From positions 11,656,001 to 11,720,000 of the forward strand of contig OZ287748.1 in the NCBI GenBank assembly GCA_965649765.1: a stretch of 64,000 nt of DNA, in the 5' to 3' direction. Origin of the DNA: Bispira polyomma. Its lineage: Eukaryota. Below the pieces are notes generated by a model. The model was not told where the DNA came from, searched no databases, and saw nothing but the letters and a program-made list of their open reading frames with translations. The position numbers and the translations under genes are program-made. Shown piece by piece: positions 3,501-61,293 of this stretch. Every line of letters starts with the position of its first letter. Within the stretch, counting starts at the first letter, position 1.

Positions 3501-6500
3501 ATACACTAAACAACAAGACACCTGAGAACTCTATTCCTTACCTTAGTCTTTCCCGATCCAGTTGGTCCTACCAACATGAGACCATGTCTGACGACTGTGG
3601 TTTCATACAGCTGGATACACTTGTGTATAAAGCCTTCCACATCCTTGAGTCCTTTTTTCAGAGCAGTCTTCCTGAGTGACGTATCCAGGGACCCATAGTC
3701 TATCGCTTCCTCCTTAATGTTCGGGAACAAGTCCGATACAATACCAGTAAACAGCTTCAGATCGTCCATCAAGAACTTGGGCACATTCACGTCTCTGATC
3801 GCTCTCAAGGCAATCAACTCCTCATCCATATCTGGGTTCTGACGCTTCAAGTTTCCAGCAGCAGAAATCACAGACTTTACAGCACGCATACCAAAGTCAT
3901 AATGGTCCTGTAAGACAACATATTAAGCAGCTGGGATGCTATTCAAAAAACATTTTATTTAGTTTTTTTTTTTTGAGTGGCTGGTCAAACCTATGTAAAG
4001 CTAAAAATAGACAATTTTTAAGAATGGCAGAATTTTAAGAATGCTAAGTGCACATGGATAATGTGCATGTGAGTGTTACAATAGCATTATATTATTAAAA
4101 GCCGGATTTCCCCCAAAAATTTTGGACAGGTTTCATTTTTGTTCATTTGGCTAAGATAACAGTAACTGAAGTACACATGAGCAAAAAAACTGTAAACAGG
4201 AAATAGACTTTCACAAGAGGTTTCTATGATGTGGAAATGGTGAAACAACAAAGATTTCAAGGTTTACATGGAATTTTGTACAATAATTCTGCTTAATTAT
4301 ATCTATTTTTTGGTCAACTGGTTCTTGCTTTTGATGTCCGATTTTGAAGACTTTTTTGCTCTAGAATCCAAAGTGAACGTTATAATCTAGTTTGCTGTCT
4401 TCTGCTCTGTGAAATCTCCAAGTTTATTGAATATATAAAACTGCCATCTTAATGGTACAAATGTATTTCCAAGGAGGTCACATTCTTTTAATAATTCGGC
4501 ACAAGAGGTCCTCAGTGGCTTTTGTGAAATTTAAACAAACACAAACATAAAAGCATAAGTTCATGGTATATAATTTGTGCATAAGAAGACACTTACCTGT
4601 GAGCTGAGCTGTTCTGACGACAGTTTGAAAGTGGTGACAATTTTCTTGGCCAAAACTCTAGCATCAGAAAAACCAAATGAGAAGAGTGAAATCTCAGCAA
4701 TCAGAGCATAGTCAGGTACCATCATAGCCACTGGGCGGAACAAGGCCTGTAAAACATTGAGATCTTAGCAATCAAAGCATAGTTAGGTACCATCATAGCC
4801 ACTTGGCGAACAATACCTGTAAAACATTGAGATCTTAGTAATCAGAGCCTAGTTAGGTATCATCATAGCTATTTTCTATAACCATTGGTCAGAATAATGA
4901 ATGACCTAAAGGACCAAAAGCTGCCACTGGTACTGAGTAGTTAGTCATATCATTATTGAATGTAAAACTTTACTTAAAGAAAAATTATATAAGCTGGACC
5001 AAACCTGAGATTGCCAATATACATGTATGACATTAACTGGAAGAATATTTCACTAATTTACAATTTTTTAGAAACTCATTGGACTTTTTTACTATTGGGC
5101 AACTTTTAGGTAATTAACATAAATTAAAATTTCACTGGCAATTAATTTTCTCTATCCAGGGTCATCATTACTAAAAATAGCTTGTAATAAATAGTTCTAA
5201 ATAAATTTAAATTTCACTGGAAATAATTTTCACTATCCAGGGTCATCATTACTAAAAATAGCTAAACTAAATTCCTGGTGAACATTTCTACTGATAGAGT
5301 AAGCTTTAATTGATGCTGAGTACACTAAGAGGTCAGAGTGAACTGCACATTATTACACACAGTCTCCTGAATATATCAGGTGTTTTACCCAACCCATTAC
5401 AGACATGCATTACCTTCAGGTTATCAGGTAACTCGGTCCTACCAGCATAGCCAGGGTTCATCGTAATAAAGACAGCACAGGAAGCTTTCAGTTCTAACTC
5501 CACCCCCTCAAACATGAACCTCTCCAGCTGTACAAACAAGATATAGGTCAAGGTTACTAAGTGAATGTATATTACTATGGTATATATGTTATTTTAAATT
5601 TATGTATACAGCTTTAAAATACATTTGTAAATTTTAGATACCCAAAAATTAATAACATAAACAAAATTATAGACTTAAAGCTTTAGGCTTAAGAGACATG
5701 TATACGTTACAGTCAATATGTGTAATCAGGGAATACACCTCCATGACTAAAATACATCTTCATTGTAACATACCTGTTATATATGACTGATGTATTCAAT
5801 AAATAATTACAGATTTTCTACACTAAAATAGTATATGCTCCAGTATTATTTTATAAATAGATTCAAAATAATGAGTACAATATTTGTATATGCCTATATA
5901 TAGTTCTATATAAATATAGAGGAAAAATAGATGGGCTAAAATATGAAAGCTTGGTCATCTTTGAACTATGAACAAATTAAGGTTCTCTGTATATTATACT
6001 ATAGTGACAAAACCTATACTTGGCATTTTAAATGATACTGCGATAGTTTTAATACAAACAGGTACACATATACACATTATTTACAGTTCTGTATACTATC
6101 TGCAACACATGAAGGTGTAATATTATTTCACACTTAAAGTTAGTTTATTTATGTACAAAGTGATTACAATGTGCATCTTTGAAAAGCAAACTACACTACA
6201 GGTGCTATTAAGTGCATGAACACTATATGTATGTGATTAAACCCTACAACCAACAGAGAAATAGGAGTTCTTAATGCTATTACAGTAGACTCTGTATAAG
6301 TAGAACAGTGTAAGTCAAATTTAGATATATATTAAGTGGAATCAGTTTTGAGGACCCAACATCAGAAAATGCTGTGTGGAAGTTTGCTACAACTGGAACC
6401 AAATACTGTCAATATTGAAAGTTTTAGTTATATAGAGTCTACTGTATAAACTTTAGACATTGAATACACAAAAATTGTAGTTTTTACTGCCACAAAGGGT

Positions 6501-51506: not shown

Positions 51507-54077
51507 GAAAATACCTCCCTAGTTGAGTCACTTTATGATGAACTGAGCACTGCCATCAAAGTTCCATCAAGATGGCTATTATTTGTGTGCGGCGATTTCA
51601 ATGCCAAGCTTGGGAAACTCAGCAAGACTGAAAAAGAAGCAGTACTTAGCATGTGTATGGGATCCTATGGAATGGGCAAAAGGAACAACAATGGTGAAGC
51701 ACTGGCATCTTTCATCAGTGCCAAAGGCCTATTTGCCACAAACACAGCCTTCAGACACCCTGCTCGTCACCGCACAACGTGGACTGGACACATTGCTGAC
51801 CCCAAGGCAAAGGCAGATTCCAATGCTACAATCGCCATCTTCAATCAGATTGACTTTGTGCTGTGTAAGCTAAAAAGCAAGCCACTGCTCAGAGATTCCC
51901 GCACTTATGGAGGTGCAGATCTCAATTCAGATCACAAGCCAGTGGTTACATGCATCCGAATGGAAAACATCAATCTGTGTCATAAGAAACACCGAAGACA
52001 GAAAGGCCAGGTCAGATATGATCTTGCTAGGCTCACCAATGACCCTGCTACCCAGGTACAATACAAGGAAAGCCTAAGAAATCAACTGACCAAGATAGAT
52101 CACTGCAGTGACCCAAACAAAGCTTTGGGCACCATATTAAAGTGTATGGAAACATCAGCTGCTAACACCCTAGGTGTGCGGAAAAACAACAACAGCCACA
52201 GACACCACACAGAAGATCCTGTAATTGTAGAAATGTCAGAAAAGCAGAAAGCATTAAGACTGCGCATCTACCAAAATGGCCAAAGTGAAGACCGAAGCAG
52301 CCTAAGAAAAGAACGCAACAATATCCTGCGCAACATCAGTAAACATCTAAAAGAACTTGAGATCATGAGAGCAGACTCTCTGGCAAATGACATCTCCTCC
52401 ACAGACGAATGTCGTAAAATGTTTAGGGCAGCTAGAGCCCTCAAGGTTGGAAGAATCATACCATCACTCTCTGTGCACAATGCTGATGGTCATTTTGTTG
52501 TAACTGACAAGGGCAAAGCAGACACAATTAGTGACTGGTTCAAAAAACAATTCACTGATCCAGAAGGAGAACAGCTAGATCCTTTCCTAGGTGAGCCCAG
52601 GCCACTAGAGGTCCCCATCAAAGAGGATAAAGTCAAGAAGGCCATAAAAACCCTTAGGTATGGACGTACATCAGGCCCTGATGGGATCAGCAATGAACTA
52701 TTCAAATATGGAAACGATACCTTATCACCATTCATCTTACCTATCATTAACTCTGCTTTTGAACACCACAACCCGATTGAAGCTGTAGGACAAGGAACTC
52801 TCATTGCACTGCCCAAACCAAAGAAACCACCTGGTCCACCTGCAAACCTGCACCCAATTGTGCTCCTGAACAGCATCCGGAAGATCATGTCCACAGTTAC
52901 GTTACACCGTATCAGAGACAAGATAGATAAATTTACCGGACCATATCAGAGTGGATTCAAGAGGGGACGCAGCTGTGCAGATATAGTTTGGGCACAACGC
53001 ATGCTTGTATCTATAGTCATGTCTAAGCACTGGGATTTTTTCAAAATGGGCATAGACATGTCCCGGGCCTTTGACACTATAAAAAGGTCAAAAATCATAA
53101 ATGTACTACACCAAGCAGGCTGCAATGAAGATAAACTACGTCTAGTGAGAACACTGTTGGCAAAAACCAAGCTGAAGGTCCGCGTGAAGTCAACATATTC
53201 AGCTGAATTTGAAACAACAATTGGCTCCCCACAAGGAGATAGCCTGTCCCCAGTGCTGTTCACCAGTTACCATGCTGCTGCCATATCATCTGTACGGAGG
53301 TGTTGAACAAGACCTAACCCTCCAATTTCCTCCCTAGGCATACCACTAGAAATGGAATACGCATATGACGTGGACTTCATTGATGAGGAAAAAGACACAC
53401 TTGACAGACTACTCCCTATAGCTGCCAAAATTCTGAAAGAATCAAATCTATTCATGAATGAAGCCAAGACCGAATTCACTCATGTATATCTGTCTGACAC
53501 GCAGGAAAAAGGAGAAAATGACAAACTTCTCCAGGGAAAAGAAGAATGGAGGAAGGGCAAGATCCTTGGATCCCTCCTCTGCAGCATCTCCGATAAAGAA
53601 GCACGTTGTGTCATGGGCAACATCGCATTTCAGTCCTTCTGGAAGATATGGATCCGAGGATCAAAAATTTCCTTCACCAAAAAACTGCTGCTATACAACG
53701 CATCATGTGTGTCAATAATGCTATGCAACTGTAATAGCTGGGCAGCTCCAAAGGCAGCTATGGACAAGCTTGAGGTCTATGTTTGGACACATACTTCAGA
53801 TGCCAGAAGACACTCCTGCACAAAAAGCCTTAGAATTTGCTGTAGTAGGATCTAACAAATACAAAGTCCATCAAGGAAGACACTGCACAAACCTACTCCG
53901 CATACTAAGAGCAGATCTCAGAGATGTAGGACTAGGAACTCTAAGAACTGCAAAGAAATTCCAGGAGCTATGAATGCTCGCAAGGGATAGAGTGTAGTGG
54001 ATCAAAATGAAGAAGGACTGATTGCAACTGTAGGTTGTTTCTACTACTACAGGTGCAGAACACAGTATATTATCATC
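51507..54077 (+). mobile_element. 5'-truncated RTE-like non-LTR retrotransposon (APE endonuclease + RT), inactivated
   Basis: ORF 51585-53306: GDFNAKLG, QIDFVL, SDHKPV (APE); QSGFKRGRS, IDMSRAFDTI, GSPQGDSLSPVLF (RT). In-frame stop at 53304-53306; YAYD replaces YADD; frame jump near 53772 into MFGHILQM. 12-bp TSD AGACATATTGGA at 51495-51506 and 54078-54089. Confidence 0.9.
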
Positions 54078-55399
54078 AGACATATTGGAATCCCACATAT
54101 TTGCATTTAAATATCTCTTTATTGCTAGATTGTCATAGTAAAGCATGGTGACTAATGTTAATTGGAATAATCCTAAACCAACCACTCTGTAGCCTACTAT
54201 AATAAATCCCAAAATCAATTTAGGTGGCTAGTTAAAGGACGGCTTACTGTACCGCAGCCACTGCCTATTTTATAACCAACCACCCACAAATCAATGGACT
54301 ATATATTTCTAGTTATCTTATTGGCTCCTTAATTTTACGATTTTTATGACAACAGAGATCAATAGGTTTTAGTCGCTCTCTAGATGACCCCCTTCGAAAA
54401 TAATAAATGTTTTACTAATGTCTGTAAAATGTTACATATTTAAATTATTATAATCCATAAATTGTTGTACTTTATATTTTTCATAACCTTCGATTTTAAT
54501 GGTACAGTGAGTACTGTTTTGATATCATCACAACTTAGAAAGTACCTTTTTTATATTTATAATAAGTTGTTTTTGACTGTAGCTGTGTCATAAGTTAAAC
54601 ATCGTAGAGATTTCATAATGTATAAAGTTGTGACCTTTAAATAGTTTACATGATGGTTGTGCATTGCCCGTTATCTTTTTGTTAAATATTTCCACCAGAC
54701 ACATCGTTCGTGTCAGTCTGTAAGTATTTTAATATTCTATTGCAGATTGTTGCATAAAGACTGCACACTGGTTGAACCACGAACCGAGTCAGTCCGTTTA
54801 TTTTGAATTTATTTACGTATAAAAATGATTTCAAAAAGACACAGCGAGGTAGAGGATCTTGGGTCCTCTCGGACTTAAATATAAATTGCTGTCAAAATAT
54901 TCAGTCTACAAAATAATATTCAAGCCCATAATATTTGAATAGCTTTAAGTCACGGTACCGTGGATTGAAGTTTTACCTTTTTACAATATTTCGCTATAAA
55001 TCATGTGTACATGTAACATATTTATTACGAATGGAAATTTATTACGTCCTGTCTTTGAAACCGCCATTAGCAGTTCACAAACTTAAGGGATTTAGAACCA
55101 ACTATGACGGTAATTATGACTGTTGTCTCTAGAACCGTCACAACCATAATTATATTAAAATATTTAAAAAGAGGATATTATGACAACCATTGTCGGTGAA
55201 ATAAACATGAAGGGATTTTACAATCAATTAAAAAATAATAAAAATAGCCGATTACCAGAGATCTGGCTGCACAACGTTTTTTGTGGCTGTTTTGGTGGGT
55301 TCGCTGTAAAATTCCTTGACTCCTTTCAATGTAAACTTTTTCAGCTAATTTAAAACAAAGAGTTTAATTGAACTTGGTGTAGGTGACAGGAGTAAACTG

Positions 55400-55466
55400 A
55401 CTGCCTTATATATTATTGGTATACAATATATTTCGAACTCCAGTGGGTGTTCTCATCAGAGGCTGT
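55400..55466 (-). ncRNA. Type I hammerhead ribozyme
   Basis: Minus strand: ACAGCCT-CTGATGA-GAAC(acccactgga)GTTC-GAAA-TATAT(tgtataccaata)ATATA-TA-AGGCAGT. Complete catalytic core; stems I, II and III all pair; AUA cleavage triplet. Confidence 0.85.
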
Positions 55467-56860
55467 ATAAAATCTTCACCTTTTTTACCTTAAGGTGGAA
55501 AAATTGACTCCGCCTGATCAGGCGGAGCAAATGAGCGGGGCAGAGCTCTAAATGGGCTCTGACTCAATGGTACTTGTTGTGGGGACACCAAATCATTTTA
55601 AAACTGAATAAGGTGGTCAGGGGACTCAGGTGAATACTGTGCTATAATTATGTTTTTATAATTTTTTATAATTTTTAAAATCTTTATTCATCTGTGAGGA
55701 AAAAAGATAAAAAATTATTAAAAATAAGTAAATGGTATAAAGAACCCATTATAATGTGTTTTTATTGAGTCCAATTTATTGGTCCTTGATAATGAATCTT
55801 GTATAAAATCCTATTTGATTATAGCATGAAAAGGTATGTAATACATAGATTAGCCCAATATGAGTGTATGTGAGTGTGTTCATGCGCATTCTGTATTTAC
55901 ACTTTGAGGGTACTCTTCAAATATGGTTATAAGAGTATGAATATGAAATGACTGATTCAATATTTGGAGGTTAATGGTTAATATCTGGATTGAGATATTT
56001 ATCCATATGGTGAAGTGCACAAAGGTAACAATAGATGAAATTGACCAGAGTGATAAGTAATTTGCCATGGTTACCAATGGGTTGACCAGTGGTGAGCCTC
56101 CACAAAATGAGGTGGCTCCAGTGGTAGTTTTACTTGAATGGATAGTTGGTCACCAGTGGTGTCTGGTGTTACTCAATTCAAACATTGGGTGACTGGGGTT
56201 ACCTGTGGGTTGACCAGTAGGTGAGTCTCCACAAATTGGGGTGCTCTGGTGGGAGATACTAATAGGCAGATGTGTACACCCATAGTGTATGGTGAGACAC
56301 AATTAAGTATGTTAGTAACAATATTACAGAAGGAAGAGGGGTGTAATTATAGTAAAAGGTGGTTTACTACATCAGTAATAACACAACCCAACTATAGTTA
56401 GAATGACACAGGAAGAAACGGAAATGTTTAATGAACATAAATGTTTAATACTGAATAAGTATAAACTAGATATAACATTAATAAGAAGTGTATATAATAC
56501 ACAATTACCGGTAATCAATAAGAATAAAAATTAAAAAGTGAATAGATATTAACTTAGTAATTTTTTCCGGACTTAGGATTAATATTACTATATTTTTTAA
56601 AAATAATGATCAAAAATTATAGTGATGTAGATTATTCGATAATAATCAGCCTAGTTAAGAACTCAGATAGGAAATGACACTAAAAATAAAATAAAACCTA
56701 TGTTGGTAGGAATTCTTTCATAGATCAGAGCAAATATTTTCCAAGCATTCTAGTAAATCAAATTGGATGAAACTAGAGTCAATGGGCAAGTTGCCCCACT
56801 GTGTAAAATCCTGTATATCTGAAGGAAGAGGGTTCTCCAGGGTGGTGGTGTCCCCAAATT

Positions 56861-57496
56861 CTACTGATTCAGGAAGTGAGAGCCCGAAGTGATTCCGTTT
56901 TCTGCAATAGTCCGCTGTATAGTAGCAGGGCAACTCCTTTCCAGGTGTGGCTGGTGAAAAGCAAGGAGTGGATTCAGGAGCATAACTGGGTGATTCATCC
57001 AACACTTCACATGTGGTGAGGTGGCTGTGGAGCACAACTTGGTGGGGCTCATCTGGGTAGTTTTGTCTCTCCAGAATACTGGTGAGGTATTGACTCCCAC
57101 ATGAGTACTTTCCCTGCAATCTGGTAAGATTGATAGGTCTGTCTGGGTGGAGTTACTAGCCCATGTAGAACGCGAGATAGTCTCTGAGGTGACAACACAG
57201 TCAGTCAGGGAGTGATCTGCTGAATAAGGTTGATCCATATCCAATAGGTAATCATGTGAAGTAAATCCAGGTGCATATTCCTCCGAATCTATACAGTCTA
57301 AAATGTTTTTAAACATTATATCTGTCTTCCTGTTGGGGCAGTTGGGAGTGTGCCTCTTCAGGTACTCAGGTCTCCTAAAAGCCTTATGGCATAGAGAACA
57401 GTGAATTCGATATTCCTGGTGTTTAGATTTAATGTGTCTTCTTAAGTTAGACTTCCTGCTGTAAGTCCCATTGCAAATATGGCAGGTAAACCACAT
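56861..57496 (-). CDS. Intronless zinc-finger protein (C2H2 + C2HC), 211 aa; may continue by frameshift into ORF 56718-57119
   Basis: FTCHICNGTYSRKSNLRRHIKSKH and CSLCHKAFRRPEYLKRHTPNC at the N-terminus, followed by an acidic, Ser/Thr-rich region; AT-rich ATG context aaaATG. Confidence 0.75.
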   Translation of the reverse strand: MWFTCHICNGTYSRKSNLRRHIKSKHQEYRIHCSLCHKAFRRPEYLKRHTPNCPNRKTDIMFKNILDCIDSEEYAPGFTSHDYLLDMDQPYSADHSLTDCVVTSETISRSTWASNSTQTDLSILPDCRESTHVGVNTSPVFWRDKTTQMSPTKLCSTATSPHVKCWMNHPVMLLNPLLAFHQPHLERSCPATIQRTIAENGITSGSHFLNQ

Positions 57497-57623
57497 TTTA
57501 ATTAAAATATTTTACACAATTTTAATAGTGCCACTGGTACTAAATATGGGCAATTTGAATACAGCTTGAATTGTGTAGTCAGGTTAAATTTCCAGGTAAG
57601 TAGAGTGAGTTGCCTGGTGACGG

Positions 57624-57695
57624 TGACGTCATAATACCCTGATCGCAACGTGACGTCAGGTGGGTGCATTACGTCAGGGTGACGTTGTGACGTCA
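57624..57695. promoter_or_regulatory. Cluster of CRE/ATF sites upstream of the zinc-finger ORF
   Basis: TGACGTCA at 57624, 57651 and 57688, plus TTACGTCA (57669) and TGACGTTG (57680). Confidence 0.6.
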
Positions 57696-57801
57696 TTAGA
57701 GCCTAGATAGGTGTTTGAGCTCTGTTGAGTGAAGGGCCCAATATAAGAATATAAAGGGATAAGGGGGCACTAGGGTAAGGGTGCCAGGTAAGAGGGCCTC
57801 A

Positions 57802-58403
57802 TCACACAAATACATTAATCCCAGTGGGGGTAAGGGTTGGTAAGGCCCATATATAGTACAGTTCCTGATGTCTTCGTCGGTCTGTACTATTTGCCTTATT
57901 ATCCAAACCTAACCAATGGACAATACTGAACTCCATATTTTTAGCAGAGTGTTGTTTCTGACTAAAGTGCCTTGACACTGGGGTGGATGGTTGTAGTTTG
58001 GGATTATAAACACTTCTTATGTGTTCATACATCCTTTGTCTGAATGGCCTTTTGGTTTCCCCTATGTATTGTAATCCACATTGATTACAGTTGATCATGT
58101 AAATCAAATTCTTTAATTCACATGTGAGACGGGGTTTTGGTGGGAGATTAATACACTTGTAAACCTTTTTTGTGTGAAACTGGTAAATTGATCTAGTTTT
58201 TTAAGTTTTGGGCAGTATGTACACTTGCCTAATCTGGTGCAAACGGGTGGGAGATCCTGTAATGATCTTTCACCACAATCTGCAGGGTATAGGATTTTAG
58301 CAGAGGTAAGTTTATCTCTGAGGTTAGGTAGCCTCTTAAATCCAATGATAGGTTTTTCATTGAATATTTTCTTGAGGTCATCTGTGTGTTGGATAATGTT
58401 CCA
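57802..58403 (-). pseudogene. Second (inverted) copy of the Penelope linker and GIY-YIG region
   Basis: Reverse complement of 58904-59506 with ~5 substitutions and a 1-nt deletion near 58178. Confidence 0.9.
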
Positions 58404-59506
58404 TGATCATGATCTGGACTCACGGTGAGAATGCTTTGATGGATTTTGTGAAATATCTTAATAATATTCACCAAACCATTAAATTCACACATGAATATAG
58501 CAGAACCCAGATTGACTTTTTAGACACAACAGTCAAATTTAACCCAAAAAGAGAGCTCATCACTACCCTGTACAATAAACCCACTGATACTCACTTGTAT
58601 CTACACCACACCTCTTCACACCCAAAAAGTGTTTTGGATAAAGGTCCCTATGGGCAATACCTCAGACTCAGGCGCATATGCACACTAGATGAGGATTTCA
58701 CCAACAATGCCAAAAAACTTACTGAGTATTACCTTGCTCGAGGTTACACCATCAAATCACTCAGGGGTCACTTCAAAAAAGCTAACAAATTTACTCAAGC
58801 ACAATTACTTGTAGTAAATAAAATTGAGCAAAAAGACCCTCCAGTTTTAGTGACTGAATACAACCCTATGAATCCCGACATTAAAGGGCTCATAAAACAA
58901 AATTGGAACATTATCCAACACACAGATGACCTCAAGAAAATATTCAATGAAAAACCTATCATTGAATTTAAGAGGCTACCTAACCTCAGAGATAAACTTA
59001 CCTCTGCTAAAATCCTATACCCTGCAGATTGTGGTGAAAGATCATTACAGGATCTCCCACCCGTTTGCACCAGATTAGGCAAGTGTACATACTGCCCAAA
59101 ACTTAAAAAGCTAGATCAATTTACCAGTTTTCACACAAAAAAGGTTTACAAGTGTATTAATCTCCCACCAAAACCCCGTCTCACATATGAATTAAAGAAT
59201 TTGATTTACATGATCAACTGTAATCAATGTGGATTACAATACATAGGGGAAACCAAAAGGCCATTCAGACAAAGGATGTATGAACACATAAGAAGTGTTT
59301 ATAATCCCAAACTACAACCATCCACCCCAGTGTCAAGGCACTTTAGTCAGAAACAACACTCTGCTAAAAATATGGAGTTCAGTATTGTCCATTGGTTAGG
59401 TTTGGATAATAAGGCAAATAGTACAGACCGACGAAGACGTCAGGAACTGTACTATATATGGGCCTTACCAATCCTTACCCCCACTGGGATTAATGTATTT
59501 GTGTGA
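58403..59506 (+). CDS. Penelope-like element ORF, 5'-truncated: RT C-terminus/thumb, Cys-rich linker, GIY-YIG endonuclease
   Basis: MIWTHG, IKFT, IDFLDTTV, LYNKPTD..YLH..SSHP, CTRLGKCTYC, LIYMINCNQCGLQYIGETKR..RQRMYEH, ELYYIW..PTGIN. Confidence 0.9.
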   Translation: MIMIWTHGENALMDFVKYLNNIHQTIKFTHEYSRTQIDFLDTTVKFNPKRELITTLYNKPTDTHLYLHHTSSHPKSVLDKGPYGQYLRLRRICTLDEDFTNNAKKLTEYYLARGYTIKSLRGHFKKANKFTQAQLLVVNKIEQKDPPVLVTEYNPMNPDIKGLIKQNWNIIQHTDDLKKIFNEKPIIEFKRLPNLRDKLTSAKILYPADCGERSLQDLPPVCTRLGKCTYCPKLKKLDQFTSFHTKKVYKCINLPPKPRLTYELKNLIYMINCNQCGLQYIGETKRPFRQRMYEHIRSVYNPKLQPSTPVSRHFSQKQHSAKNMEFSIVHWLGLDNKANSTDRRRRQELYYIWALPILTPTGINVFV

Positions 59507-61293
59507 TGAGGCCCTCTTACCTGGCACCCTTACCCTAGTGCCCCCTTATCCCTTTATAATTTAAAACATACCCTAAACTCCCTCGTAATAGCCCATGCTT
59601 TCATAAGAGCCCACTCCTAGTTTTCCATAAATACTGTTAATATTTTGAATAAAAAATTACATTCTCTTTAGAGCCCATCCCCTACATTTCCTCAAGTTCA
59701 AGTTAAAAGCCCATGGGGTATTTAGAGGGAGCTTAGGGTATTTTTAGTCCGTAAAAAGTTCCTGAAAAAATAGTTATTTTGCTTCCTGAATATATAATAT
59801 GAAAATCGGTATCGCCTATATTCACTGAGATATAGGCATTTAATAAATGACTGTCACTCTAAAAAACTTGTATTTTAAACAATTTTAAGTAGACAGTGCA
59901 ACTTTAACTATGAATGCTTTAATTATCATTAATTAAAATATATATTAGAGACGCCTATCAGAAAGTTCATAATAACAGCTTTTTAGTAATACTAAAACCA
60001 ACATTTTTGGTCAGCTATTCATATTGATACAGCCATTTAATCAATTAAAATTTTCGGGGAAACCGTCAAAAATGAATAACGCAGATCTTAAATTCGAAAT
60101 ATATATCCAGCGAAACTTCGAATTTAACAGCGAAATAACTTTACCGCGAATCGGTTAAACAGCAAAACCTCTTTGCTGACTGTCTTCGGAAGGAAGCAAT
60201 TAACAGAGCTCCCCGAAAATGTCTTTGATCTTTGACTCGGCAAGAACCGCCAACATATATTACCTTGTAATGGCTTGTATCTATATGTTATACATGTATA
60301 AGGATAGTTAACTGTCTTCGGAAGGAAGCAATTAACGGAACTCCCCCAAAATGTCTTTTATCTTTGGCTCTGCATTTATTACCTTATATCTTGTAACAAT
60401 TTTATAATTTTAGGTAAAGGAAAAAAGGAGTTTATTGCTTCATTCATGCTGTATTAGGTGTGACGGTTCTAAGTCGCATTGTTTTCCGAACCGCCTATGG
60501 CTGTTTTAAAGCCTTGGCGTATTTATTAATGCAATTACATAAGAAAATGTCATGCCATGTGTATATGAGCCATGTATGTACACATATTTGCCAGAGATAA
60601 TGGATCAAGTGAACTTTCACACCGTTTCTCGTATACAAAAATGTACATTTCGGTGTGCAAGAAATGTATTCTCTATATGTATACCACAAATGTTTAAGGT
60701 TCCCAGGTGTATACATGTTATTGTTGGCGGGTGTTTATAAATAGAATATAAGTAGACAGTAAAAATACAGAATACATTAGTTTATTACTAAAGTATAATT
60801 CAAATAATATATACAAACAAAATTGATACACTCAGCTGTGTCACCCCGCCAGACCCATACTAATTTTTTACAGTTTTATCCTATTACTTTTGGTGTATGT
60901 GGTGATTAATTTTCCTATGATCCCCAACAACTAAGAACCTTTGATCATTGTGTAACTGTGGCCTTCTCTATGCCTATGCCTACTAAATACCTTCTTTTGA
61001 TATTCAATCAAAGAACCTGAATAAATTATTGCTCATTTATGTTTAACTAATTCGAACTTTTTCTGAAAAAAAAATATTTCTTTCAAAGTGGCTATTATAC
61101 CGATGATGTCCGTAAATAAATACATCACTATTTTACCAAATAAAATATATTTTACCAAATATATTTTATTTTAAAATAGATTTCATTTATTTTACCGACA
61201 AGGGACAGAGACTCTTAAACATGGTTACTGAGGCAAACGCTAGTCTACTGTCTTATCGCTCTCACACAAGCCCACATAGAACTGGAGATTTCT

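What the first reader, a model, noticed from the sequence alone, without database searches (positions are those of the whole stretch)
55346..59568. Penelope-like retroelement carrying a zinc-finger cargo gene between its GIY-YIG ORF and its hammerhead, inside one TSD
Seen: the 12-bp direct repeat TAATTTAAAACA (55346-55357 and 59557-59568) brackets 4.2 kb, and the right copy starts exactly where the inverted-arm identity ends. Read on the minus strand, the insert is: inverted RT-EN segment, GIY-YIG end, CRE cluster, intronless two-finger ORF (56861-57496), ~1.3 kb spacer, hammerhead, 42-nt tail. Established: EN-positive Penelope-like elements normally have a single RT+GIY-YIG ORF and hammerheads in their pseudo-LTRs, and the Cys-rich linker points to the Neptune group. 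Multi-ORF PLEs that I know of are mainly the EN-less Athena/Terminon type. Inference: this family mobilises a separate DNA-binding gene with its own promoter, either an autoregulator/anti-silencing factor or captured host cargo.
Basis: partly seen in the sequence, partly recalled or inferred. Interest (0 to 1): 0.85.

Follow-up and report, generated by a model that had tools for sequence, protein, structure and literature searches.

The report
Penelope-like retroelement with zinc-finger gene
This is one dead, front-truncated insertion of a common Penelope-like jumping gene whose family keeps a separate two-zinc-finger gene, under purifying selection, between its enzyme gene and its self-cutting RNA motif, and lands as two inverted arms that end at two different fixed points.

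Summary
The 12-bp repeat TAATTTAAAACA (55346-55357 and 59557-59568) is a real target-site duplication. Nine independent insertions of this family here, the window's among them, and two in a second species, have the same twin-arm build with 11-16 bp duplications.

The insert is one event with two arms:
- A long arm on the minus strand (58403 to 55358): GIY-YIG end, fixed point Y (57750), CRE cluster, zinc-finger gene, spacer, hammerhead, 49 nt.
- A short inverted RT-EN arm (58404-59558) that ends at Y.

The zinc-finger block is part of the element. It is collinear with RT-EN in many copies, and 5' truncation points run straight through it.
- The family's ORF is 259-265 aa.
- dN/dS between subfamilies is 0.08-0.15.
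- A second genome has the same layout, with a 36%-identical zinc-finger protein.

The hammerhead is not found by Rfam. It folds as a full type I hammerhead, and helices II and III change with compensation between the species. The element also has an ORF1, so it has three ORFs.

No RNA evidence or empty-site allele could be obtained. What the zinc-finger protein does is inferred. Earlier agents of this scan reached the same reading on other copies. I found no paper describing it.

The parts
55346..55357 (.). Left copy of the 12-bp target-site duplication TAATTTAAAACA
   Evidence: Family-wide duplications of 12-16 bp at the same ends.
55358..58403 (-). Long arm: a 5'-truncated element copy running from inside the RT-EN ORF through Y, CRE cluster, zinc-finger gene, spacer and hammerhead to the element's 3' end (end A, 55358)
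   Evidence: Collinear in L003, L004, L006, L013, L023 and L024. End A is shared by more than 30 copies with unrelated flanks.
55358..55406 (-). 49 nt between the predicted hammerhead cut and end A. In tandem copies the sequence continues, and the ORF1 ATG follows 22 nt later.
   Evidence: [quoted passage not shown]
55403..55463 (-). Type I hammerhead ribozyme motif. Helix I is 55463-55460 paired with 55406-55403. The CUGAUGA core is 55459-55453, helix II 55452-55435, GAA 55434-55432, and helix III (9 bp) 55431-55408. The predicted cut lies between 55407 and 55406.
   Evidence: The free MFE fold is the three-way junction. The motif is nearly invariant in 32 distinct sequences. Helices II and III change with compensation in the second species. 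No Rfam hit.
55464..56717 (-). Spacer of about 1.25 kb between the zinc-finger stop and the hammerhead. It is the least conserved part, except for the last ~200 nt next to the hammerhead. AATAAA/ATTAAA signals lie at 56449 and 56432. Places 55646-55681 lie here and were not sent to search tools.
56718..57496 (-). Zinc-finger gene remnant (ORF3): two N-terminal C2H2 fingers and a long disordered tail. It is frameshifted after about codon 164, so it reads as 211 aa (57496 to 56861) plus a second frame down to 56718.
57497..57749 (-). Promoter-like region between Y and the zinc-finger ATG. Full TGACGTCA sites lie at 57688-57695, 57651-57658 and 57624-57631, with further half sites.
   Evidence: Conserved in position in four subfamilies, and as a CRE/AP-1 site cluster in the second species. 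86-94% identity between subfamilies whose ORF is 56-85% identical.
57750..58403 (-). 3' part of the RT-EN ORF on the long arm (GIY-YIG domain, stop at 57802-57804) plus 52 nt to the fixed point Y (57750). This is the left inverted-repeat arm.
58404..59558 (+). Short inverted arm: an RT C-terminal part, Cys-rich linker and GIY-YIG fragment (ORF 58403-59506) that stops at Y (59558) with no zinc-finger block
   Evidence: Inverted arms ending at Y occur in 10 independent insertions here and 3 in the second species.
59557..59568 (.). Right copy of the target-site duplication. Its first two bases (TA) are shared with the arm end.

Best explanation
What it is. 55358-59558 is a single, young, non-functional insertion of an autonomous EN+ Penelope-like element (PLE) with a Neptune/Nematis-type endonuclease.

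The family's unit is about 5.84 kb and carries three ORFs, in this order:
- ORF1, about 260 aa, basic and helical.
- ORF2, the RT plus GIY-YIG endonuclease.
- 52 nt to a fixed point, Y.
- A CRE-rich promoter-like region of about 250 bp.
- ORF3, about 260 aa, with two C2H2 fingers and a disordered tail.
- A spacer of about 1.25 kb.
- A type I hammerhead.
- 49 nt to end A.
In tandem copies the next ORF1 starts 22 nt after A. The zinc-finger block therefore occupies the position of the pseudo-LTR.

How it inserted (inferred). The endonuclease made a staggered double-strand cut, which gives the 12-bp duplication. Both 3' ends then primed reverse transcription on element RNA, one at A and the other at Y. 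The two cDNAs, both stopped early, were joined head to head at 58403/58404. This explains why only one arm carries the zinc-finger gene.

What the protein does (inferred). Shown: the ORF is selected, and the family expresses it or needs it. Inferred: it is expressed from the CRE region as its own message, and it acts as a DNA-binding factor for the element. My split is about 35% regulator of the element's own transcription, about 30% retrotransposition or target-binding cofactor, and about 15% anti-silencing factor.
For: Structure:
- Collinear RT-EN, Y, CRE, zinc-finger gene and hammerhead in L003, L004, L006, L013, L023, L024, L031, L032 and L034.
- At least 38 copies span Y.
- 5' truncation points are scattered through the block: 57390, 57451, 57607, 57643, 57707, 57815, 57851.
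- End A is shared with unrelated flanks, or continues into the next unit.
- ORF1's ATG lies 22 nt after A.
- Duplications of 12-16 bp enclose the A-to-Y composites in nine insertions here, and of 11-13 bp in two insertions in a second species.

Selection on the zinc-finger ORF:
- Intact 256-265-aa ORFs survive in several subfamilies.
- dN/dS is 0.08-0.15 between subfamilies, and 0.14-0.15 where dS is unsaturated at about 0.8.
- In the second species a 36%-identical protein aligns over its full length and sits about 300 bp downstream of RT/GIY-YIG.

Hammerhead and promoter region:
- The CRE cluster is conserved.

Protein build:
- Two confident fingers and one helix; the rest is disordered but carries conserved short motifs.

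Mechanism:
- PMC11167929 shows that a PLE protein cleaves and extends both strands and starts reverse transcription at internal RNA sites that do not match the target.
Against: - No RNA data. A separate zinc-finger transcript, its start site and hammerhead cleavage are therefore untested.
- Rfam does not recognise the hammerhead.
- Within this genome the hammerhead is nearly invariant, so covariation rests on one other species.
- Y as a second initiation site is an inference from insertion ends. Neither an RNA species ending at Y nor another joining mechanism is excluded.
- RT-EN and the zinc-finger block have different divergence between the same subfamilies (dS 0.36 against about 2). The modules therefore recombine and have not strictly co-evolved.
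- My loci were chosen by the zinc-finger block, so RT-EN copies that lack it are under-sampled.
Confidence: 0.85

Rival explanations
1. The zinc-finger block is a separate repeat, either a non-autonomous element or an older transposon. The PLE would lie next to it because of site-specific insertion or 3' transduction, and the block would not be part of the PLE unit.
For: - The inverted arms end exactly at Y, so RT-EN can exist as a unit ending at Y without the block.
- RT-EN and the block differ in divergence between subfamilies.
- In Adineta vaga Pen1, a 0.9-1.5 kb captured spacer separates the ORF from the 3' pseudo-LTR (PMC3846280).
Against: - The Y-to-CRE junction is identical in at least 38 copies and in all subfamilies.
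- Truncation points run continuously across Y.
- Duplications enclose the composite, never the block alone.
- The block ends with the element's hammerhead and end A, which directly precede ORF1 in tandems.
- The same arrangement and block size (2,367 against 2,392 bp) occur in a second species at 36% protein identity.
- The A. vaga spacers are not conserved between copies; this block is.
Confidence: 0.06
2. The zinc-finger ORF is a neutral passenger, a captured host gene fragment with no role for the element. Its apparent conservation would come from recent common ancestry of the copies.
For: - The window copy and several others are broken.
- Within the young subfamily dN/dS is 0.36-0.54.
- PLEs are known to mobilise host genes in trans (PMC3846280).
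Against: - Between subfamilies dS is 0.7 to above 2, while dN stays at 0.11-0.31. This gives a ratio of 0.08-0.15 both in the fingers and in the rest of the protein.
- Intact ORFs of equal length survive in four diverged subfamilies and in a second species, with motifs conserved along the whole length.
- No longer host paralogue turned up. Apart from generic multi-finger proteins, the only hits were small proteins of the same build.
Confidence: 0.06
3. The 12-bp repeat is a chance match in AT-rich DNA. In that case 55358-59558 would be two or more separate events: an older zinc-finger-bearing fragment plus a later inverted PLE fragment.
For: - Two other exact 12-mers occur by chance in the same 7 kb.
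- The right flank starts with an abundant MITE directly after the repeat.
Against: - The repeat sits exactly at both element ends.
- The same two-end geometry gives 11-16 bp duplications of unrelated sequence in ten other insertions.
- The two arms are 99% identical, as expected for one event.
Confidence: 0.03

Closest known systems
Canonical EN+ Penelope-like elements of the Neptune/Nematis type (Arkhipova 2006; Craig et al. 2021, PMC8557442)
   Same: - RT followed by a C-terminal GIY-YIG endonuclease, with a C-x5-C-x2-C linker and CCHH inside the core.
- A hammerhead just upstream of the ORF start.
- Heavy 5' truncation, partial tandems, and an inverted 5'-truncated copy at the 5' side.
- Target-site duplication, and AT-rich targets.
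   Different: - These elements are described as single-ORF. Here there are three ORFs, one of them a selected C2H2 gene with a conserved CRE cluster in the pseudo-LTR position.
- The region between the EN stop and the next ORF start is about 2.4 kb.
- The hammerhead has a stable 9-bp helix III, not the minimal dimer-type motif usual in metazoan PLEs (PMC4209133).
- RT clade membership was not tested.
Poseidon PAc from Anolis carolinensis, characterised in vitro (Frangieh et al. 2024, PMC11167929)
   Same: - Both target strands are cut and extended.
- Reverse transcription starts at internal, AC-rich RNA sites shortly downstream of the hammerhead, without homology to the target.
- One end of an insertion carries extra sequence, the 'tail', that the other end lacks.
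   Different: - In PAc the two start sites are 30-40 nt apart and lie inside the ORF.
- Here the two fixed ends, Y and A, are 2.4 kb apart and bracket a gene.
- End A lies 22 nt before the ORF1 ATG.
- Initiation at Y and A is inferred from genomic junctions, not shown biochemically.
Adineta vaga Penelope families: Pen1 spacers and host genes framed by pseudo-LTRs (Arkhipova et al. 2013, PMC3846280)
   Same: Extra DNA of 0.9-1.5 kb sits between the RT-EN ORF and the 3' pseudo-LTR. PLE machinery can carry non-PLE genes.
   Different: - The rotifer spacers differ between 90%-identical copies.
- The mobilised host genes there replace the RT-EN ORF and move in trans.
- Here the gene sits beside RT-EN in the same unit, is conserved across subfamilies and species, and is under purifying selection.
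Multi-ORF EN-minus PLEs (Athena/Terminons), and the Neptune element with a small ORF1 in killifish (PMC12602865)
   Same: More than one ORF in a PLE. A small ORF of unknown function upstream of the RT ORF, comparable with ORF1 here.
   Different: - Terminons are giant, telomere-associated and mostly lack EN.
- The killifish ORF1 is upstream, shows no similarity to known proteins, and is not a zinc finger.
- No downstream C2H2 gene is reported. A full-text search for 'Penelope-like' with 'C2H2' gave no such description.

Membership tests
EN+ Penelope-like element | Reverse transcriptase followed by a C-terminal GIY-YIG endonuclease in one ORF | tested here: met
   Pfam RVT_1 and GIY-YIG on the 833-aa ORF of L031. 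GIY-YIG on both window arms. The window copy itself lacks most of the RT.
EN+ Penelope-like element | CCHH motif inside the GIY-YIG core (PMC8557442) | tested here: met
   Read from the translations: two Cys between the IY and YIG motifs, and His residues downstream. R, E and N residues are also present.
EN+ Penelope-like element | Pseudo-LTR organisation: partial tandems and/or an inverted 5'-truncated copy, heavy 5' truncation, target-site duplication | tested here: met
   Tandem continuation after end A in L003, L021, L029 and others. Inverted arms. Duplications of 12-16 bp.
EN+ Penelope-like element | Hammerhead ribozyme motif in the pseudo-LTR, close to the ORF start | tested here: met
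   The motif lies 71 nt upstream of the ORF1 ATG. It is conserved across subfamilies and in a second species.
EN+ Penelope-like element | Single ORF (canonical description) | tested here: not met
   Three ORFs: ORF1, RT-EN and the zinc-finger ORF. This is a descriptive feature of known members, not part of the enzymatic definition.
Neptune clade | CX2-5CxxC Zn-finger-like linker upstream of GIY-YIG (shared with Nematis; absent in Penelope/Poseidon; altered in Hydra) | tested here: met
   A C-x5-C-x2-C motif lies upstream of the GIY motif in the window ORF 58403-59506 and in L031.
Neptune clade | RT groups with Neptune reference sequences in a phylogeny | not tested
Hammerhead ribozyme, type I | Conserved core: C3 U4 G5 A6 N7 G8 A9, G10.1-C11.1, G12 A13 A14, A15.1-U16.1, H17 | tested here: met
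   All core positions are present in window:55398-55472 on the minus strand and in L036-L038.
Hammerhead ribozyme, type I | Three helices around the core, supported by covariation | tested here: met
   - The free MFE fold gives helices I, II and III.
- Between the two species, 5 of 9 helix III pairs and 3 helix II pairs differ on both sides and stay paired.
- This rests on two species only. There is no variation within the genome.
Hammerhead ribozyme, type I | Match to the Rfam hammerhead covariance models | tested here: not met
   No hit at E<=10 on a 401-nt stretch, and none at E<=5 on the loci. The probable cause is the long helix III and the mismatch in helix II.
Hammerhead ribozyme, type I | Self-cleavage | not testable with these tools
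   Needs in vitro transcription, or mapping of RNA ends.
C2H2 zinc-finger protein | C-x2-C ... H-x3-5-H fingers recognised by Pfam | tested here: met
   zf-C2H2 at E=1.4e-9 with two stretches and E=3e-9. Fingers modelled at pLDDT 75-88.

The most novel reading that the evidence does not exclude
An ancient lineage of EN+ Penelope-like elements has turned its pseudo-LTR into a gene cassette. The cassette is a CRE-driven, separately expressed two-finger DNA-binding protein that the element needs, either as activator of its own promoter or as a targeting or retrotransposition cofactor. The lineage also integrates by twin priming from two fixed RNA sites 2.4 kb apart. The classical 30-40 nt PLE 'tail' is thereby enlarged into a gene-bearing segment that is delivered on only one arm of each insertion.
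Probability: 0.4. Interest if true: 0.75.

Novelty: new variant of a known kind. Interest (0 to 1): 0.6.

Why it matters
EN+ PLEs are the least understood retrotransposon class and are described as single-ORF elements.
- A lineage with a selected accessory DNA-binding gene and a conserved promoter module would change that description.
- It would give a handle on how PLEs are transcribed and targeted.
- The many clean A/Y junctions with duplications are in vivo support for the both-strands-primed, internal-initiation model, which so far has been shown only in vitro for one lizard element.
- On the practical side, such copies produce small zinc-finger 'genes' and hammerheads that genome annotation may take for host features.

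Tried and rejected
- Rfam scans for a hammerhead gave nothing. I used folding and cross-species comparison instead.
- MAFFT alignment of the hammerheads of the two species misaligned helix III, so it was not used for pair counts. Pairs were read from constrained folds.
- RNA and empty-site evidence:
  - The look-up of sequencing runs gave three runs of unknown kind.
  - Those places were kept out of every later search.
- Empty site through paralogous flanks:
  - The left flank (55250-55357) and the right flank (a MITE at 59569-59741) are both repeats.
  - No place with both adjacent was among the scored hits.
  - A joined-flank query would have needed a constructed sequence and was left out.
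RT-EN copies lacking the block could therefore not be sampled without bias.
- Ideas rejected:
  - Poly(A) addition at Y: there is no AATAAA before Y.
  - A shared sequence motif at Y and A as the initiation signal: both are AC-rich, but the similarity is weak and is not kept in the second species.
  - An ORF start inside the hammerhead's AUG: it stops after 16 codons.
- A fold search of the protein was not run, because only the two fingers are ordered.

Full report
**Observation**

The 12-bp direct repeat TAATTTAAAACA lies at 55346-55357 and 59557-59568. The inverted arms are 57750-58403 and 58904-59558, 99% complementary. Pfam finds GIY-YIG on both arms and two C2H2 fingers in the ORF 56861-57496. 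A 12-mer alone is weak evidence in this AT-rich DNA (GC 36%): two other exact 12-mers occur in the same 7 kb.

**The block 55358-57749 is a repeat and part of a Penelope-like element**

A search of the window's own genome (1.04 Gb) with 55358-57749 found at least 10 near-full copies at 92-96% identity and older subfamilies at 69-80%. Aligning the loci to the window gave three results.
- In L003, L004, L006, L013, L023 and L024 the block is collinear with the RT-EN ORF. The point equivalent to 57750/59558, called Y here, continues straight into the CRE region.
- 5' truncation points are scattered through the block and the ORF (57390, 57451, 57607, 57643, 57707, 57815, 57851 and others). This is expected if one RNA is the template.
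- Many truncated copies carry at their 5' side an inverted RT-EN fragment that ends at Y.

A 400-nt probe across Y found at least 38 spanning copies at 88-100% identity.

**Ends and duplications**

End A (55358) is shared by more than 30 copies. Their flanks are either unrelated and AT-rich, or a common sequence that is the start of the next unit in a tandem. Ends at Y are followed either by the CRE region (internal) or by unrelated DNA (outer end of an inverted arm).

I paired the A flank and the Y flank of each twin-arm insertion. This gave direct repeats of 12-16 bp with unrelated sequences in the window, L005, L008, L009, L020, L022, L024, L030 and L034. L004/L032 looks the same by eye. 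At some A ends, 1-4 extra bases match the RNA's continuation. The window's repeat is therefore a real target-site duplication, and 55358-59558 is one insertion.

**Full unit**

- L031 holds an 833-codon RT-EN reading frame with RVT_1 and GIY-YIG.
- Upstream of it is an ORF1. In tandem copies its ATG lies 22 nt after end A (L003 3898). L034, an older subfamily, repeats the terminal 135 bp in front of its ORF1.
- The unit is A, ORF1, ORF2 (RT-EN), 52 nt, Y, CRE region, zinc-finger ORF, spacer, hammerhead, 49 nt, A. It is about 5.84 kb.
- The zinc-finger block thus sits where canonical PLEs have their pseudo-LTR.
- The linker has C-x5-C-x2-C and the EN core has CCHH. That is the Neptune/Nematis configuration (PMC8557442). 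The RT clade was not tested.

**The zinc-finger gene**

- Family copies have ORFs of 256-265 aa. The window copy has a frameshift after about codon 164, and the rest of the protein is readable in another frame down to 56718.
- Between subfamilies, dN/dS is 0.08-0.15. In the unsaturated comparison (dS about 0.8) it is 0.14-0.15. Within the young subfamily it is 0.36-0.54, as expected for copies decaying after insertion.
- AlphaFold models the two fingers and a following helix with confidence. The remainder is disordered, although it carries short motifs that are invariant between species.

**Second species**

Proteins 36% identical over 98% of the length occur in the ENA assembly ERZ22147071.
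- There they lie about 300 bp downstream of RT/GIY-YIG ORFs on the same strand, often with an inverted RT-EN arm upstream.
- In L038 the inverted arm ends at the point equivalent to Y, and the block is 2,367 bp against 2,392 bp here. The composite is flanked by a 13-bp duplication. L037 has 11 bp.
- A profile search of 1.84 billion representatives found about 20 further small proteins of the same build. The other hits were generic multi-finger proteins matching only the fingers. Two of the small proteins lie on contigs too short to show context.

**Hammerhead**

Rfam gives no hit. Other evidence supports the motif.
- The free minimum-energy fold of window:55398-55472 (minus strand) is a type I hammerhead with every core nucleotide in place: a helix I of 4 bp, a helix II of 4+2 bp around an A-A mismatch, and a helix III of 9 bp.
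- The motif is nearly invariant in 32 distinct sequences from subfamilies whose neighbouring spacer is 46-77% identical.
- The second species has the same core and helix I about 1.1 kb after its zinc-finger ORF. Its helices II and III have different sequences that remain paired.
- The stable helix III differs from the minimal dimer-type motifs usual in metazoan PLEs (PMC4209133).

**Promoter-like region**

Three full TGACGTCA sites and several half sites keep their positions in four subfamilies. The second species has a CRE/AP-1 cluster at the same place. AATAAA/ATTAAA signals lie 210-290 nt after the stop codon in both species. This is weak evidence in AT-rich DNA.

**Mechanism**

Frangieh et al. 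2024 (PMC11167929) showed three things for a PLE protein: it cuts and extends both target strands, it starts reverse transcription at internal RNA sites unrelated to the target, and the genomic 'tail' is the stretch between two start sites. The junctions here fit that model, with two start sites, A and Y, 2.4 kb apart. One arm is primed at A and carries the zinc-finger block. The other is primed at Y and lacks it. The two incomplete cDNAs are joined head to head. This is inference from junctions. Inverted arms ending at A also occur (L006, L025, L026).

**Limits**

- No RNA or population data could be laid.
The loci are therefore biased towards copies that contain the block.
- The joined-flank query for an empty site was left out, because it has no reference.

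**Literature and earlier notes**

Full-text searches found no description of a PLE with a C2H2 gene.
- A killifish Neptune element has a small upstream ORF1 (PMC12602865).
- Rotifer Pen1 elements have unconserved captured spacers (PMC3846280).

Earlier agents of this scan reported the same family and the same reading on other copies. I reached my reading before seeing those notes, and I tested it here on my own loci.

**Verdict**

The finding is a new variant of a known kind. This particular copy is dead.

Noticed in passing
window 59569-59741: The right flank begins, directly after the duplication, with a MITE of about 175 bp. It has terminal inverted repeats of about 30 bp starting TACCCTAAAC. 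It is very abundant: 2,690 first-look candidates, with copies about 92% identical.
   Followed up: partly
window 55050-55357: The left flank is made of two other short repeats, about 55050-55220 and 55250-55357, with 939 first-look candidates. The second repeat runs up to the insertion point.
   Followed up: partly
window 51585-53306 (+), also 53352-53855: A 573-aa ORF with an RVT_1 domain (E=1.2e-15) followed by a 167-aa ORF. It looks like a non-LTR (LINE-type) retrotransposon fragment upstream of the finding.
   Followed up: no
RT-EN against zinc-finger block, window subfamily compared with L023/L034: Between the same two subfamilies, the RT-EN 3' part has dS 0.36 (90% nt identity) and the zinc-finger ORF has dS about 2 (about 70% identity). 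The Y region, the CRE cluster and the terminal 200 nt are about 90% identical. The modules have different histories, which suggests recombination or template switching between subfamilies.
   Followed up: partly
L003 3898-4290; L031 4691-5200; L034 7105-7842 (minus): An ORF1 of about 250-260 aa lies upstream of the RT-EN ORF, separated from it by about 180 nt. It has a basic KGKKRRR stretch and no Pfam match. It starts 22 nt after end A. A comparable small ORF1 is reported for a killifish Neptune element (PMC12602865).
   Followed up: partly
window 55500-55530 (minus strand), compared with other copies: Upstream of the hammerhead, most copies carry a perfect hairpin with a 10-nt duplicated unit (TCAGGCGGAG). 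The window copy and a few others lack one unit.
   Followed up: no
L038 1692-1737, 13821-13866, 14886-14932 (second species): Near-threshold Rfam matches to the histone 3' stem-loop (31-32 bits against a gathering score of 34; E about 1e-5). They lie next to DDE_Tnp_4 (Harbinger/PIF-type) transposase ORFs.
   Followed up: no
window 60179-60374: Two 64-nt copies 132 bp apart, 91% identical: a short tandem-like repeat downstream of the finding.
   Followed up: no
L031 about 4660-4700 and L032 about 6319-6388: Head-to-head junctions of two long arms. In L032 the inverted arm is a nearly full-length ORF1 plus RT-EN copy ending at Y. A twin-arm insertion can therefore hold a full enzyme gene on one arm and the zinc-finger gene on the other.
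   Followed up: partly
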